NCBI GenBank assembly: GCA_907165135.1
Contig: OU015566.1
Span: 3,906,001-3,970,000, forward strand
Direction of reading: 5' to 3'
Origin: Oikopleura dioica
Lineage: Eukaryota; Animalia; Chordata
DNA: 64,000 nt
The notes beneath the pieces are model-generated. The model had not been told where the DNA came from and ran no database searches. It saw nothing but the letters and a program-made list of their open reading frames with translations. Positions 889 through 26,759 of the stretch are shown here, in pieces (the stretch's first letter is position 1; each line of letters opens with the position of its first letter). The translations under genes were made by a program, and so were the position numbers.

Positions 889-2027
889 ATGGGATTTTGG
901 GACATTCCAAACTTGAAACTCTATGGAATCCTTACCGCGCTCTTCATCCCCTTTCTTATCGTCAAAATTTGGACAGATTTGAAAAGTAAATTTGGAATTT
1001 TGATCTTTTTGAAATTCAATGATCGCTCGAAAATTGGAGAAGCTTTGGTCGAGATGCGAAAGTGCTTTCAAAAAGGCTCCTGCGTCATTTTTCGAGAATA
1101 CAAGCAGATAAAAATTGAAAAATACGAGTTTCTCAGAGACGTTTCGAAGTACAAGAGTTTTTCGCATATCCTCTGGGCAATTGGTCAAAAATTAAAATAG
1201 CAAAATCTAAATTTGAACAAAAAATGACCAAGAAAAAAGCTTCATTGCGAGTCTGAGTCGCATTTGGACTACATTCTCCCTAAAATTGAGCAGCGGCTGA
1301 ACAATGATCCTGTCGTTGCGAAATCAAAAACGATGAAGCTGAAAGATATTGGACTGGCGCACCTTTTCGACACGATTACTCTCGGAGTTTTCAACAAGAA
1401 AAAGACGTCAGAAAGGTTGGTTCTTTAATTGAGCTTGATTTGAAGGATGCCTTTAAGATTCCTGCGCTTTTACAGTCCACATGTTCGATACGGAGACTGG
1501 AGCAATCGAGACTGGTTCAACATCCTTAGGTAAGAGAACTGAAAGAGCTAGAAATCGAGCCTTTTTAGTCTTATGTACACGTCGGGAATGGAGCGAATTT
1601 CGCGAATTCAAGGCTTCGCTGAATACAAAATGCTCCAAGAGCGTTTTCCTACTCCATCTGGCGGCTTGGTCGAGTCCAAAAAAGACTCGGTCGTTTTCGT
1701 CGAAGTCACTTTTCCCTCCGAAGACAAAGATTCTGTTTGAAATAAAGAAGGCAAATTCTCATTTTTCGCAAGCTTTCCAAGATTTATTTGAAGCTGAAAA
1801 GAGGAAATACAGAAAAAATACAGGAGGATGAAATTTGTTTGTTGGACAGGGAGAAAAAGCAACTTATGTTTACAATTTTTAAACCGGGGAAAAATGGTGA
1901 CTTGCTGGTTGATTTAACAGATTGTTTGAACGAGCGTAGGCAGATAATAATGAACAAAGATATTTGGGGAGGGGATTTAAATGAAAGGCTGATTGACGCT
2001 GATTTTGGACGAATGAAAGTAGAATGA
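889..2027 (+). CDS. Uncharacterised multi-exon protein with N-terminal hydrophobic anchor (gene X, copy 1, apparently intact)
   Basis: MGFWDIPNLKLYGILTALFIPFLIVKIW... followed by spliced exons (LHCESESHLDYILPKIE..., RFLRFYSPHVRYGDWSNRDWFNIL, SLMYTSGMERISRIQGF..., LSKIYLKLKRGN...DFGRMKVE*). Several differences between copies are synonymous in this frame. The first intron donor is uncertain. Confidence 0.6.
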
Positions 2028-11953: not shown

Positions 11954-13769
11954 ATGGGATTTTGGGACATTCCAAACTTGAAACTCTATGGAATCCTTAC
12001 CGCGCTCTTCATCCCCTTTCTTATCGTCAAAATTTGGACAGATTTGAAAAGTAAATTTGGAATTTTGATCTTTTTGAAGTTCAATGATCGCTCGAAAATT
12101 GGAGAGGCTTTGGTCGAGATGCGAAAGTGCTTTCAAAAAGGCTCCTGCGTCATTTTTCGAGAATACAAGCAGATAAAAATTGAGAAATACGAGTTTCTCA
12201 GAGAAGTTTCGAAGTACAAGAGTTTTTCGCACATTCTTTGGGCAATTGGTCAAAAATTAAAGATCGCAAAATTCAAAATTTAGCAAAAATGACCAAGAAA
12301 AAAGCTTCATTGCGAGTCTGAGTCGCATCTGGACTATATTCTTCCTAAAATTGAGCAGCGGCTGAACAATGATCCTGTCGTGGCGAAATCAAAAACGATG
12401 AAGTTGAAAGACATTGGACTTGCGCACTTTTTCGACACGGTTACTCTCGGAGTTTTCAACAAGAAAAAGACCTCAGAAAGGTTGGTTCTTTAGGAAAGAT
12501 AGATTCTAGTGATGATTTTAAGATTCCTGCGTTTTTACAGTCCACATGTTCGATACGGAGACTGGAGCAATCGAGACTGGTTCAACATCCTGAGGTAAGA
12601 GAACCAAAAGAGCTAGAAACCGAGCATTTAAGGGTATAGTCATCGATTTTGGTCGGGTCTCCAATTTTTAATCTGAGCACATTTTTAGAATCCCCATAAA
12701 TTTCTGACCAAAAAACTTATGATTATTTTGGTTATCTTAACCTATTTGGCCGCAAATTGCGTTTGAAAGTGGCGAAATTTAGTGCATTTTGATCATTAGC
12801 CGAATATTTTGAAATTTTGACCATTTTTAGGGGCCTTGTAAGGGTGCCATATGATACATTTTTAGAAAGCTTATATTCAGGGCATTTATTTAGGACCACG
12901 TAGGGTAAATTTGGGCTATGCCCGCAGGGCATTTTATCAAAATGAAAGGTAAAAATTTGGTACCTTGGTTCTTTTGAAAATTTTTCAAAGAAAATTAGAT
13001 GATTACAGTATAAGGCTGTGTCATTTTTAAGATTAGGGTCTATATTTTAAGAAAAAAACATAAAATCAATAGGTTTATATAGAAACTTTGGACTTATAAC
13101 GCCTTGAAAAGAGGCAATTTTCGCGTTATTTGGCCGAGAGCTCAACTTTGAGCGATCCGCAAACCATGATTTTCTTGGAAATAACGTAAAAAGCTGTGAC
13201 AAAAGTGAGATCTAGGATAGATCTTTTATATGACCTATTTTAGAGCCTCCCACATATTCCCAGTTCCGAGTTATAACCCCCTGAAATCGGCCAAATCGAC
13301 GACTATACCCTTAAAGTCTGATGTACACGTCGGGAATGGAGCGAATTTCGCGAATTCAAGGCTTCGCTGACTACAAAATGCTTCAAGAGCGTTTTCCGAC
13401 TCCATCTGGCGGCTTGGTCGAGTCCAAAAAAGACTCGGTCGTTTTCGTCGAAGTCACTTTTCCCTCCGAAGACAAAGATTCTGTATGAAATAAAATACAA
13501 AATTCTTAATTTTCGCAAGCTTTCCAAGATTTATTTGAAGCTGAAAAGAGGAAATACAGAAAAAATACAGGAGGATGAAATTTGTTTGTTGGACAGGGAG
13601 AAAGCAACTTATGTTTACAATTTTTAAACCGGGGAAAAATGGTGACTTGCTGGTTGATTTAACAGATTGTTTGAACGAGCGTAGGCAGATAATAATGAAC
13701 AAGGATTTTTGGGGAGGGGATTTTGAAAGGCTGATTGACGCTGATTTTGGACGAATGAAAGTAGAATGA
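11954..13769 (+). pseudogene. Gene X copy 3 (MITE in an intron, 2-nt deletion frameshift in the last exon)
   Basis: Homologous to 889-2027. gggagaaagcaac here versus gggagaaaaagcaac in copies 1 and 2 shifts the last-exon frame. Confidence 0.65.
12632..13310. mobile_element. Non-autonomous DNA transposon/MITE, 679 bp, TTAA TSD, GGG...CCC termini (Kolobok-like)
   Basis: TIR GGGTATAGTC(A/G)TCGATTT. TTAA at 12628-12631 and 13311-13314. Absent from the same intron in gene X copies 1 and 2. Confidence 0.88.
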
Positions 13770-23201: not shown

Positions 23202-23523
23202 TCACATATCTTTTTCAGTGTTTGAGTAAACTTTAACCTTTTTATCAGAATAAGGATTCATCCTCCCAAGTCTCATGAGGCCGCTAAGGTAGCTTCGTTT
23301 TCGCATAACTCCGGGTTTTCCGAAGATCTTACAATTCGTGGAAGATTTTCTCCATTCTTCTTAACTCGTTTCCTATCGGAATCAGAAAGTTCTTACCGGG
23401 TAAAAAGGCGCAGAGAGGGCTCTCGAAGCTATCGTTCAAGTACTGCAAGTATGAAAATGCCATCTGTCGATTTGGATTGCCTGCAAATGACGAAAAAATA
23501 AGAAAATTGAAGAAAAACAGCAT
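23202..23523 (-). CDS. Candidate neuropeptide precursor yielding SYLSGLMRL-amide
   Basis: Signal-like MLFFFNFLIFSSFAG. A 37-nt GT-AG intron (23360-23396) gives ...PLCAFLPEEWRKSSTNCKIFGKPGVM-RKR-SYLSGLMRL-G-R-MNPYSDKK. The 3' end is uncertain. Confidence 0.5.
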
Positions 23524-23630
23524 GATTTTTGTATATTTTCTTCTGGGATTGTTTTTAAATATCGTTTATTCGGCTCAAGAGATAATTTTTAATGAAGACT
23601 GAACAACAAAAATTTAATAATGAAACATCA

Positions 23631-25127
23631 CTAATGATGCCCAGAATGATCATTTTCATGCATCATTTGCATATGCTCTTCATGGCTCATCGACTGATGC
23701 ATCATCGAATCGTGTTGTATCATTCCCATGTGGTCTCCATGGCTCATTGATCCATGATTTCCTCCATGCATTTGATGCATTCCATGGTCTCCTTCGTCTC
23801 CTCCCATTTTGTGATGTGCATGGCTCATCATTTCCGGAACAGCGGGTCGTTTCCAGTGGCCCATCGAAATGTGCATGTCTGAGAATGACCCCGCGTCGCC
23901 TGGGTATCGAGCTTCTCTCTCGATCAGATATTGAGGAATATCTGCGGCATTGTCAGCGCTAGAATATCGATATTTTCTAGGAAAACTTGGTTTATTCTTA
24001 CTTTTTCCAGCACTCAGGCGACTCGTTCGGGGAGAATGTATAAGGAACTGTATACATCAAATACATATTGCACATCTCATCCTGTCGACCTGGCCCGTCG
24101 AAGACATCGATGCCGTTTTTATTGTCAAATGTGCAGATAGCGCGGACATAGTCCCACTTATAAAGAGTGATGGGACCACCAACTCGTGTAAAGAAACCTT
24201 GGGGCCACTGAGGGTTGCCTTTTCCGATAAGGGTCCAGTCTTTTTTGTGTGGTCGACGGACGAAGGCGCTGACAACTCGTCCGTTATCGTGAGTATGAGC
24301 TCTTTTTTCTGTTATTAGATGAAAAAACAGCTAGCTCTTATAATGACCGTACAGATATTTATACTGATTCTCAAAATTATCAAATAGTATCATGAATTCA
24401 ATGATTCAGGAATATTTAAGCAAAGAACGATTTAACAAGTTTGTGACTTTTGATAATCTAGATTATAGAGTCTAGAATCTAGAATAACACTTTCCTGAAA
24501 GCAAAAACTTCAATCGGATTTCGCCTGAATCTGCAGGCAACATGAACATTTGTCCTCTCCCTTGCTGGTAGATGAAACTCCGGACTGGCAAGGAGATAAA
24601 TGCCGACAGTTTTTTTCGGTGGCTCAGTTGTCAGCTCAAACTCGACTCCCGTCAGATTGTCAGCTCCATGAAATTTATCCTTGTAGTGCGCCTCGATCGC
24701 GATTGACTTGATTCCTGAGACGCCTCCGACGTGAATTCCAGCGTCGGGCGGGAATTCTAGCTGACCGGCTGCCATCGCCCAGGAGAAGATGATCTGTTCG
24801 CCAGAGCATGGGACATTTGGGCTAGCATCGAGAGTTTGATGAGAGAAGTCGTCTTTGCATCCGCGAACGATCATGTGATGGACCTTTTCATCGAATAAGG
24901 GTGTCACGGCTTTATTTGTGGATCAAAAACGGCTCATAGAAGATCTTGATTGAATAGAATTTTGATTTAATCCACTTTCCTGTGATGAAAAAATCTCCTT
25001 CTCCGATTCTCTTGGTCAGGGAAATCTTCGTGTTCAAATACTGATCATCTTTCAATGCCCTAGCATTTTTCATTTGAAATTTTTCTTTCAACGCATTTGC
25101 CCCCAAAATGAGATTGAAAAGTTTCAT
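23631..25127 (-). CDS. PHM: Monofunctional peptidylglycine alpha-hydroxylating monooxygenase (PHM; PAM family) with a His/Met-rich C-terminal tail
   Basis: Copper ligands VHHM, EAHY, AHTH and DEMCNMYLMY are all present; VGGVSGIKSIAIEAHY and LIGKGNPQWPQGF match the PHM core. Signal-like N-terminus. The ORF stops before any PAL domain. Confidence 0.88.
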
Positions 25128-25297
25128 CCTTGAAAAACGTTTTATTCTGCTTTTGATTTTTATTGAACCAAAAAAGAAATAAGGAGAGTTTTATATGACA
25201 GGCGAGAGATGAGTTTTGACAGATTATTTGACAGGAGGAAGAAATTTTGCATTGATGTCACGATCGGTCGTTTTCGAGAGAATTCGAGACCGGGATC

Positions 25298-26759
25298 TTA
25301 TAAGGTGTACCCAGTAGTGCAGGAGGGAGTTGGAGGGCAAGAATTGACATCTGCGACTCCAGCTTTTTTGGGTCAGCAAAGGTTTTTGTCAACAAGGTTT
25401 TTTGTCAACAAGGCTTTTCGACAACAAGGCTTTTTGTCAACAAGGCTTTTTGTCAACAAGGTTTTTTGTCAACAAGGCTTTTTGTCCGCAAGGCTTTTTG
25501 TCGACAAGGCTTTTTGTCAACAAGGTTTTGTCAACAAGGCTTTTTGTCAACAAGGTTTTGTCAACAACGCCTTTTGTCAACAAGGTTTTGTCAACAAGGC
25601 CTTTTGTCAACAAGGTTTTGTCAACAAGCTCTCGAAGCTATTGCTGACCTTTCCTGTAAAAGTGCAAACATCAATCGATCCATCAAGATAAAAAGTCCCG
25701 GTCGTCGAAAAAGAAAACGCATTGAATTCAAAATCAAGAACTCTATTTGTCGAAACCATCGAGCTGCCATCTATTGGCCCAAAATCAAGAATCGTCGTCT
25801 TGCAAAAATCCTTGACGACCTCGTAAGAGTTTCCTGTACGACTAGAATCTTCATAACTGATGAGATTCTCCAGGTAGAACTCGGCGTTGGAGGCTAATGA
25901 CGGGGCGGAAATTCTGGCGTAGATTTTTTGACCGACGAGGGAGGTCGAGATGGCACTGGTTCGGCTTGAGTCTTCGAAGAGTTCTAGCGTTGCGACATTT
26001 GAAATCTAGATTTTTCAATCAAAACGCTTTTTCTGCTTGTTTTACCTGAAGATTCTGAGTTTCTTGATCTCCAATCAAGCTCGGCGCAACTGTCACTCCC
26101 TCAAACCCTTCATCAACTGTTTCACTTCCATCCCTCCAGATCTCACAACTCGCAGTGTATTTGAAAACATCATCGAATCCACTGATACTCGCCCCTGTTA
26201 TTTCCCAAGTGAGCAGGAGTCCATCGTCAATCGCTGCTATTGTTGGGTCGCATTCGGAGATTTCAAAACTTTCAACGAATCTTGTCATCATTGGAGCACT
26301 TGATCCCGTACAAGAGCCGATTTTAATTCGCGCGTCTGATTCTTGATTAGATGGAAGATCGAGGTAAATGTCTTTGACATTTGCAACGACAACCAGCGAA
26401 TTTCCTTGAATATATCAGAGTCAGTAAAGGCTTCCTGTGAAGCTAAAATCGTCATTTTTCTGGGGTTTTGTCAGGAACCGACAATAAAATTTCGACAAAT
26501 TTTGCGTGGGCGGCTACTCGGCTTCTGATTGGCCGGTAAGCCGAATACAGGCTTCTGATTGGTTGAAAATTTCCACGCAAAATTTGTCGAAATTTTTTGC
26601 CGGTTTCTGTCAAAATCCCATTTTTCTTCCTGTACCTGTGCAGACAACCGCGATATTCGTCTGCTTGCATGTCCCTGTACTCGACTCATAAGTCCAGTTC
26701 TCTGGGCATGCGAAACCAAACGCTTCTCTTATCAAGAAAAACAGGACAAAAAGGGGCAT
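25298..26759 (-). CDS. Secreted zona pellucida (ZP)-domain protein
   Basis: Signal peptide MPLFVLFFLIREAFG, then CPENW...C...VVC. ZP-N-like exon (SEC...YTASC) and ZP-C-like exon (VGQKIYARI...FYLENL...VVKDFC...FEFNAFSFS...YLDGSIDVC). Confidence 0.7.
25372..25630. repeat. Intronic minisatellite, ~15-nt unit (TTTTGTCAACAAGGC), forming 30-nt higher-order repeats
   Basis: Visible tandem repeat inside the last intron of the ZP gene. Confidence 0.9.
26474..26607. mobile_element. Palindromic MITE carrying CTGATTGG (CCAAT) motifs
   Basis: TIR GGAACCGACAA..AATTTCGACAAATTTTGCGTGG. Related copies at 46771-46903 and 60798-61148. Confidence 0.8.

What the first reader, a model, noticed from the sequence alone, without database searches (positions are those of the whole stretch)
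23202..25127. Amidating enzyme PHM immediately followed by a putative amidated neuropeptide precursor: a candidate enzyme-substrate operon
Seen: 108 bp after the PHM stop (23631), an ATG (23523) on the same strand opens a signal-peptide ORF. After a 37-nt GT-AG intron it reads ...C...C...GVM-RKR-SYLSGLMRL-G-R. Established: a basic cleavage site, peptide, Gly and basic residue form the canonical amidation signature; PHM catalyses the first amidation step; Oikopleura has SL trans-spliced operons. The MRL-amide end resembles RFamide-type peptides. Inference: a novel neuropeptide co-transcribed with its processing enzyme.
Basis: partly seen in the sequence, partly recalled or inferred. Interest (0 to 1): 0.8.

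Follow-up and report, generated by a model that had tools for sequence, protein, structure and literature searches.

The report
Small secreted-peptide gene beside PHM
Just after a working peptide-amidating enzyme gene in the plankton tunicate Oikopleura dioica lies a real, unannotated two-exon gene for a small secreted protein that could be cut into an amidated peptide. Neither that processing nor a selected enzyme-substrate operon is shown, and the pairing is absent in a more distant lineage.

Summary
The window is O. dioica OKI2018_I69 chr1. A four-exon, PHM-only gene (25127-23631, minus strand, 396 aa) keeps all copper ligands. An ATG at 23523, 107 nt after its stop, opens a 94-codon gene once a 37-nt GT-AG intron (23396-23360) is removed. 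It reads RKR-SYLSGLMRL-GR.

The small gene is real. A contig from another lineage (L007; PHM dS 0.66) has the same two exons, no indels and a 37-nt intron at the same place. dN/dS is 0.21 in the predicted frame (P=1e-5 against neutrality). A partial duplicate elsewhere on the chromosome keeps exon 1 and the intron.

The neuropeptide reading is only partly supported:
- KR and G-R flank the nonapeptide in both lineages, but only 4 of its 9 residues are identical.
- The best-conserved part is the upstream Cys-loop region ending CKIFGK.
- The motif arises in 35-39% of composition-matched shuffles.
- No family match was found.

Spacing is operon-like (ZP gene, PHM, small gene; each AATAAA lies about 15-45 nt before the next ATG). 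A third lineage has an unrelated gene after PHM. No RNA data could be obtained, so splicing, trans-splicing and co-transcription are untested.

This scan has already noted several other hidden peptide genes in this genome, on other DNA.

The parts
25298..26759 (-). Upstream co-oriented ZP-domain gene. Its last exon is 25362-25298 with stop TAA at 25300-25298. AATAAA signals lie at 25164-25159 and 25146-25141. The gap to the PHM ATG is 170 nt.
   Evidence: tblastn of GenBank model P0152 on the window. Pfam PF00100 on P0152:1-300. Sequence read.
24980..25127 (-). PHM exon 1 (start codon and short signal-like N-terminus). It is followed by a 70-nt GA-AG intron (24979-24910).
   Evidence: Exon-by-exon check against P0152. 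A third lineage has exons 1 and 2 as one open frame starting with the same Met.
24495..24909 (-). PHM exon 2 (N-terminal copper domain, HH and H ligands). It is followed by a 193-nt GA-AG intron (24494-24302).
   Evidence: PF01082, E 7e-12. Rat PHM, E 1e-14. Junction check.
24002..24301 (-). PHM exon 3 (C-terminal copper domain, HxH and Met ligands). It is followed by a 43-nt GT-AG intron (24001-23959).
   Evidence: PF03712, E 2e-16. Rat PHM, E 4e-14. Junction check.
23631..23958 (-). PHM exon 4, including the His/Met-rich tail (about 23876-23634) and stop TAG 23633-23631. There is no PAL domain and no membrane anchor.
23524..23630 (-). 107-nt gap. It holds the PHM poly(A) signal AATAAA (23570-23565), an A/T-rich TATTTAAAAA element (23561-23552), and AG followed by A at 23544-23542 and 23541-23539 (candidate SL acceptors).
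   Evidence: Sequence. The gap is 75% identical to L007, against 56% expected at neutral sites. The AATAAA block is conserved in all lineages. The AG-then-A acceptor rule is from PMC6389100.
23397..23523 (-). Small gene exon 1. It has a 14-residue hydrophobic signal-like N-terminus (23523-23482), then a highly conserved stretch ending in the first Cys (23412-23410).
   Evidence: (dN/dS 0.10).
23360..23396 (-). 37-nt GT-AG intron, phase 1. A tandem NAGAAG acceptor also allows a 40-nt in-frame variant.
   Evidence: Same position and length in the window, L007 and the paralog. It is 59% identical, i.e. about neutral. Annotated neighbouring introns are 40 and 43 nt.
23202..23359 (-). Small gene exon 2. 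Features in order: second Cys (23333-23331), CKIFGK, RKR (23303-23295), SYLSGLMRL (23294-23268), G-R (23267-23262), a non-conserved tail, and stop TGA 23204-23202.
   Evidence: (dN/dS 0.39).

Best explanation
Two real genes sit head to tail. Gene 1 is a soluble, PHM-only paralogue of PAM with intact copper sites and a His/Met-rich tail. Gene 2 is unannotated, has two exons, and encodes a 94-residue, K/R-rich protein with a short cleavable-looking signal peptide and one likely disulfide loop.

Most likely gene 2 is a fast-evolving secreted pro-peptide that is cut at basic sites in the secretory pathway. The step from KR...R-L-G-R cleavage to carboxypeptidase trimming and Leu-amide formation (SYLSGLMRL-NH2) is plausible but inferred. 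The better conserved candidate product is the N-terminal Cys-loop peptide ending CKIF. Its ancestral flank was probably the canonical G-K-R; the window's copy has G-K-P.

The genes belong to a co-oriented ZP-PHM-small gene cluster with operon-like spacing, so co-transcription followed by SL trans-splicing is possible. I read the adjacency as a product of genome compaction and positional operons, not as a conserved enzyme-substrate unit.
For: PHM: PF01082 and PF03712. Rat PHM is the best solved match in both domains, and the HH, H, HxH and Met ligands align. The exon junctions equal the GenBank model.

Small gene: an ortholog in L007 has the same exon-intron structure and no indels over 285 nt, while PHM introns carry large indels. 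dN/dS is 0.21 in frame, against 0.58 and 4.9 in shifted frames, with P=1e-5 against neutrality. PHM baseline divergence is dS 0.66.

A partial duplicate (window 23876-23291 against L016 1223-1733) keeps exon 1 and the 37-nt intron, with 4 synonymous to 1 non-synonymous change in exon 1. The hydrophobic N-terminus has small residues at -3/-1 in all three copies. KR and K/R-L-G-R are conserved between the two lineages. The genome has at least 5 proprotein-convertase loci and a full PAM.

Spacing: each AATAAA lies about 15-45 nt before the next ATG at both junctions. The published positional operon criterion (same strand, at most 500 bp) is met.
Against: There are only two full orthologs. The nonapeptide is poorly conserved (4 of 9 residues), and on the window's branch exon 2 took 8 non-synonymous against 3 synonymous changes. 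The motif is frequent by chance. No homolog or family was found in Pfam, the word-indexed protein search, the ESM Atlas or JGI metagenomes. No signal-peptide predictor was available.
Confidence: 0.55

Rival explanations
1. PHM and an amidated neuropeptide precursor are co-transcribed as a selected enzyme-substrate operon, and SYLSGLMRL-NH2 is a bioactive RFamide-like neuropeptide made by the neighbouring enzyme.
For: The genes are on the same strand with a 107-nt gap, and AATAAA plus AG-A acceptor motifs lie in the gap. The pair is conserved in L007, and the duplicated fragment carried the PHM tail and small gene together. KR...G-R is conserved.
Against: In a third lineage (PHM 75% identical), homology stops about 20 nt after the PHM AATAAA and an unrelated ORF follows. 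O. dioica operons are rarely conserved, their genes' functions are only loosely related, and their expression is weakly correlated (PMC11067885). 693 internal promoters are known within operons (PMC6389100). The peptide is the less conserved part and the motif is common by chance. A complete PAM exists elsewhere. No RNA evidence.
Confidence: 0.12
2. The gene is real and secreted, but it is not a prohormone. It would be a small disulfide-bonded extracellular protein (for example a house or matrix, defence or binding factor), and the basic and Gly-basic sites come from its K/R-rich composition.
For: The strongest constraint is on the N-terminal 50 residues with the two Cys, not on the proposed peptide. 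The motif appears in 35-39% of shuffles. The window's branch shows relaxed constraint in exon 2. The upstream neighbour is a secreted ZP-domain protein.
Against: The probable ancestral G-K-R directly after the conserved CKIF, the conserved KR, and the conserved K/R-x-x-R with Gly at -2 are what a convertase/amidation substrate looks like. L007 carries three Gly-basic sites in 87 residues.
Confidence: 0.25
3. It is not a functional coding gene. The conserved stretch would be PHM 3' flanking or regulatory sequence, or a decaying ORF.
For: The gene is not annotated in GenBank and is absent from protein databases. The window's copy has a branch three times longer than L007's. There is no canonical AATAAA after its stop in the window.
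Against: The excess of synonymous change is frame-specific. There are no indels or stops in two lineages at dS 0.66. The intron evolves neutrally between constrained exons.
Confidence: 0.08

Closest known systems
Monofunctional PHM genes (e.g. Drosophila Phm) and bifunctional PAM
   Same: It has both copper domains, all six copper ligands and substrate-contact residues aligned to rat PHM. It has a signal-like N-terminus. It is soluble, with no PAL, as in insects.
   Different: It is a larvacean paralogue only 47% identical to O. dioica's own bifunctional PAM. It carries a long His/Met-rich C-terminal tail. It coexists with a full PAM on another chromosome.
Amidated neuropeptide or peptide-hormone precursors (signal peptide, basic sites, C-terminal Gly)
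   Same: It has a short secretory-looking N-terminus, is under 100 residues, and has a KR site upstream and Gly-Arg downstream of a 9-mer. A basic residue lies at -4 of the monobasic site. There is a Cys pair upstream.
   Different: It has no sequence relatives in any known family. The putative mature peptide is less conserved than the pro-region. There is a single copy of the peptide. No expression or peptide data are available.
-RLamide or -RFamide peptides (molluscan myomodulins ending LRLamide, insect FXPRLamide pyrokinins, FMRFamide)
   Same: The predicted C-terminus is hydrophobic-hydrophobic-Arg/Lys-Leu-amide. LRLamide myomodulins are documented (PMC3434067, PMC8172996).
   Different: This is a resemblance of three or four residues only, partly recalled from memory. 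L007 reads IIKL, there is no Pro-Arg-Leu core, the precursor architecture differs, and no homology was shown.
O. dioica SL trans-spliced operons
   Same: The genes are co-oriented and the CDS-to-CDS gaps are 170 and 107 nt. The poly(A) signal lies just before the next ATG. AG-A motifs are available as acceptors. The GenBank model even fuses the first two genes.
   Different: Membership is positional only, with no SL or polycistronic reads examined. Known operons are enriched for housekeeping and germline genes and are not enzyme-substrate pairs (PMC11067885).

Membership tests
PHM (peptidylglycine alpha-hydroxylating monooxygenase) | Both Cu2 monooxygenase domains present | tested here: met
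   PF01082 at 46.1 bits and PF03712 at 60.3 bits, both over their cut-offs.
PHM (peptidylglycine alpha-hydroxylating monooxygenase) | CuH ligands (HH, H) and CuM ligands (HxH, Met) conserved | tested here: met
   Alignments to rat PHM show VHHM, AHY, RAHTH and DEMCNMY at the ligand positions.
PHM (peptidylglycine alpha-hydroxylating monooxygenase) | Closer to PHM than to DBH or MOXD1 | tested here: met
   PHM chains score E 1e-14, against E 2e-3 for DBH 4zel.
PHM (peptidylglycine alpha-hydroxylating monooxygenase) | Hydroxylating activity on Gly-extended peptides | not testable with these tools
   This needs an enzyme assay.
Amidated neuropeptide precursor | N-terminal signal peptide | tested here: inconclusive
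   There is a 13-residue hydrophobic core (mean Kyte-Doolittle 2.0-2.5) with small residues at -3/-1 in three copies. No dedicated predictor was available.
Amidated neuropeptide precursor | Peptide flanked by basic cleavage sites, with Gly before the C-terminal site, conserved in orthologs | tested here: met
   The window reads RKR-9mer-GR and L007 reads QKR-9mer-GR. The pattern alone occurs in 35-39% of shuffles.
Amidated neuropeptide precursor | Mature peptide more conserved than the spacer or pro-region | tested here: not met
   Only 4 of 9 residues are identical, while SSTNCKIFGK and the exon 1 core are 100% conserved. dN/dS is 0.39 for exon 2 against 0.10 for exon 1.
Amidated neuropeptide precursor | Homology to a described peptide family | tested here: not met
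   No hit in Pfam, the word search, the ESM Atlas or JGI metagenome scans. Exons were searched separately.
Amidated neuropeptide precursor | Neuronal or endocrine expression and detection of the amidated peptide | not testable with these tools
Peptidomics and in situ hybridisation are needed.
O. dioica SL trans-spliced operon | Same strand and short intercistronic distance | tested here: met
   The gap is 107 nt CDS to CDS, which meets the 500 bp rule of PMC11067885. The 60 bp rule (PMC7986045) is measured between annotated gene boundaries, which are not known for this unannotated gene, so it could not be applied. AATAAA lies 42 nt before the ATG.
O. dioica SL trans-spliced operon | SL added at an AG acceptor of the downstream gene; polycistronic precursor | not testable with these tools
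   Only motifs were seen: AG followed by A at 23544-23542 and 23541-23539. No reads were available.
O. dioica SL trans-spliced operon | Gene pair conserved across lineages (expected if the pairing is selected) | tested here: not met
   The pair is conserved in L007. In the third lineage (L010-L014) an unrelated ORF follows PHM.

The most novel reading that the evidence does not exclude
A chordate keeps a dedicated, soluble PHM paralogue and a lineage-restricted amidated-peptide precursor in one polycistronic unit. Enzyme and substrate would then be made together in the same secretory cells: a true enzyme-substrate operon in an animal.
Probability: 0.1. Interest if true: 0.75.

Novelty: new member of a known kind. 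Interest (0 to 1): 0.35.

Why it matters
Larvacean peptide signalling is almost uncharted, and this adds one more unannotated, selectively constrained secreted-peptide gene to O. dioica. If the gene were co-transcribed with PHM and its product amidated, it would be a rare animal case of functionally coupled genes in one operon. O. dioica operons are otherwise thought to be functionally loose. The present evidence makes the gene solid. It leaves the coupling unlikely to be conserved or selected.

Tried and rejected
No RNA evidence exists in this report.
- The word-indexed protein search with the 64-aa unspliced ORF found nothing. It also failed to return the L007 ORF that exists on a Logan contig, so this blank is weak.
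- Pfam on both exons gave nothing, and so did the ESM Atlas.
- Two JGI metagenome scans with exon alignments gave no relatives.
- Exact look-ups of the unspliced ORFs returned only L007. The GenBank PHM model is not on record in the contig index.
- tblastn of both exons against the third-lineage contigs gave only noise.
- I rejected the idea that the small ORF is a remnant of the PAL half of PAM. It has no similarity, and PAL sits on C5.
- I rejected the alternative 24-nt intron as too short, and the other GN-AG combinations because they are not conserved.
- The acceptor-like TTGTTCAG at 23606-23599 is not conserved: L007 has AA in place of AG.

Full report
**Identity of the window.** The own-genome search places the window at G000:C4:3906001-3970000 of a 64.28-Mb, 19-contig assembly. 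The 90% cluster of the PHM exon contains GenBank CAG5104008.1, 'Oidioi.mRNA.OKI2018_I69.chr1.g1043', Oikopleura dioica. This is the Okinawa lineage.

**The PHM gene.**
- On the minus strand the exons are 25127-24980, 24909-24495, 24301-24002 and 23958-23631, giving 396 codons.
- Each exon's translation and each split codon match the GenBank model.
- Introns 1 and 2 (70 and 193 nt) are GA-AG with the same donor AG|GAAAGTG. Intron 3 (43 nt) is GT-AG.
- Exon 2 hits PF01082 and exon 3 hits PF03712, both above cut-off.
- Both exons match rat PHM structures at E about 1e-14, against 2e-3 for dopamine beta-hydroxylase. The HH, H, HxH and Met copper ligands and the Arg, Asn and Tyr substrate contacts align.
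- The protein ends in a His/Met-rich tail and has no PAL domain or membrane anchor.
- The genome has two further Cu2-monooxygenase loci. One, on C5 at 4.79 Mb, is a bifunctional PAM with the PAL/NHL half (P0160 is 47% identical to this PHM).
- GenBank model g1043 (669 aa) fuses an upstream ZP-domain gene (PF00100) to PHM and skips the PHM start.
- ORFs from another lineage begin with the same Met and signal-like N-terminus, and they have exons 1 and 2 contiguous. This supports 25127 as the true start and also confirms the GA-AG junction.

**The observation.** The ATG at 23523, the 37-nt intron 23396-23360 and the reading RKR-SYLSGLMRL-GR are all as described. Unspliced, the ORF stops at 23329. 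The acceptor is a tandem NAGAAG, so a 40-nt in-frame variant is also possible.

I used comparison instead.

A full HMMER search with PHM exon 2 found a 96%-identical ORF on a 3.2-kb Logan contig (L007). This contig carries the whole PHM and the downstream region.
- Between the window and L007, PHM exons give dS 0.66 and dN/dS 0.04. PHM introns are 66-72% identical in aligned columns and full of indels.
- The small gene's two exons align without a single gap. They are 76% and 70% identical.
- The intron is again exactly 37 nt with GT...AG. It is only 59% identical, which is about neutral.
- Sequence after the stop is unalignable.
- Nei-Gojobori dN/dS, computed exon by exon and summed, is 0.21 in the predicted frame (exon 1: 0.10; exon 2: 0.39). 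The two shifted frames give 0.58 and 4.9.
- The excess of synonymous differences has P=1e-5.

A six-frame search of the own genome found a second copy of exon 1 (76% identical) at C4:6247907.
- It is part of a roughly 590-bp partial duplicate matching window 23876-23291.
- The duplicate carries the PHM tail, the gap, exon 1, a 37-nt intron and the first 23 codons of exon 2.
- It breaks just at the start of the proposed nonapeptide.
- Its exon 1 has 4 synonymous against 1 non-synonymous private change.

Neighbouring annotated introns of 40 and 43 nt show that 37 nt is within the local range. I conclude that this is a genuine, spliced, protein-coding gene. It is missing from the searched protein databases.

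**What the protein looks like.**
- All three copies begin with a 13-residue hydrophobic core followed by small residues at -3/-1 before Gly15. I read this as a short signal peptide, but no predictor was run.
- The best conserved parts are residues about 22-39 (ending in the first Cys) and the segment SSTNCKIFGK with the second Cys.
- After that the sequence is K/R-rich and variable.
- The window has GKP-GVM-RKR-SYLSGLMRL-GR plus a 20-residue tail.
- L007 has GKR-AVGQ-KR-NYLGGIIKL-GR-MSPGF-GK plus a 5-residue tail.
- With the paralog as third sequence, the ancestral flank of CKIF was probably G-K-R: Gly is shared by the window and L007, and KR by L007 and the paralog. The window's copy lost this canonical amidation site through Arg to Pro.
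- KR before and K/R-L-G-R after the nonapeptide are conserved. This gives a basic residue at -4 of the monobasic site. Only 4 of 9 peptide residues are identical.
- On the window's branch, exon 2 took 8 non-synonymous against 3 synonymous changes, compared with 1 against 5 on the L007 branch.
- The window's copy has a branch three times longer than L007's in exon 1.
- A dibasic...Gly-basic pattern appears in 35-39% of shuffles of exon 2, so the motif is not evidence by itself.
- The genome has at least five proprotein-convertase P-domain loci as well as PAM, so the processing machinery exists.
- Pfam, the ESM Atlas, the word search and two metagenome scans gave no relatives.

**Operon question.**
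- The ZP gene stops at 25300-25298, and AATAAA lies at 25164-25159 and 25146-25141. The PHM ATG is at 25127.
- PHM stops at 23631 and its AATAAA lies at 23570-23565. AG followed by A occurs at 23544-23542 and 23541-23539. The small gene's ATG is at 23523.
- This repeated layout, with a poly(A) signal 15-45 nt before the next ATG, is what internal operon junctions look like.
- The cluster meets the positional definition used for these genomes: same strand and at most 500 bp (PMC11067885).
- The 60 bp criterion (PMC7986045) is measured between annotated gene boundaries, which are unknown for this unannotated gene, so I could not apply it.
- The gap is 75% identical to L007, above neutral. It also holds a conserved A/T-rich TATTTAAAAA element that could serve as the small gene's own TATA-like promoter.
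- 693 internal promoters within operons are documented (PMC6389100).

In a third lineage the picture differs. PHM there is 75% identical, and it was seen in two JGI metagenomes, ENA, Logan and an NCBI assembly (L010-L014).
- The ZP-PHM order is kept.
- Homology with the window ends about 20 nt after the PHM AATAAA.
- A different 103-aa ORF follows, and no trace of the small gene lies within 800 nt.
- This fits the published finding that O. dioica operon content is rarely conserved, and that operon genes are functionally loose and weakly co-expressed.

**Verdict.** It is most likely a secreted, convertase-processed pro-peptide. An amidated C-terminal nonapeptide is possible, but it is not the best conserved element. 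Co-transcription with PHM is plausible on spacing alone and was not tested. A selected enzyme-substrate operon is unlikely, because the pairing is lineage-restricted.

Earlier notes of this scan list several other hidden peptide genes in this genome on other DNA. I did not test those.

Noticed in passing
window 23631-26759 (minus strand): GenBank model OKI2018_I69.chr1.g1043 (669 aa) fuses a ZP-domain gene to PHM. It skips the PHM start codon and signal-like N-terminus. The two are separate genes with a 170-nt gap.
   Followed up: partly
window 24979-24910, 24494-24302, 25653-25363: Three GA-AG introns share almost the same donor: AG|GAAAGTG twice and AG|GAAAGG once. The ZP-gene intron (25653-25363) is filled with a roughly 16-nt tandem repeat (about 25640-25385).
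   Followed up: partly
window 889-1176, 2639-2926, 11954-12241 (plus strand); L011 1828-2139: A 96-103-aa ORF with a membrane-anchor-like N-terminus and no Pfam match occurs three times in the window. At 90% identity, it is the gene that follows PHM in the third lineage.
   Followed up: partly
G000:C4:6247629-6248139 (L016 1223-1733): A partial duplicate of about 590 bp carries the PHM His/Met tail, the gap and the first two thirds of the small gene. It has no PHM catalytic exons. It is closer to L007 than to the window's own copy.
   Followed up: yes
window 23876-23634: The His/Met-rich PHM tail is 19 codons longer in the window than in L007 and in the paralog. A His-rich linker also follows the PHM domain in a bifunctional larvacean PAM (P0003), so the tail probably descends from the PAM linker.
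   Followed up: partly
G000:C5:4792720-4795181 and G000:C4:12417801-12418233: The genome holds a bifunctional PAM (PHM plus PAL/NHL) on C5 and a third Cu2-monooxygenase locus on C4 at 12.42 Mb.
   Followed up: partly
window 23523-23397 compared with L007 and L016: The window's copy of the small gene has a branch about three times longer than L007's, including synonymous sites (13 synonymous private changes in 42 codons). The adjacent PHM tail shows nearly equal branches. This is unexplained.
   Followed up: partly
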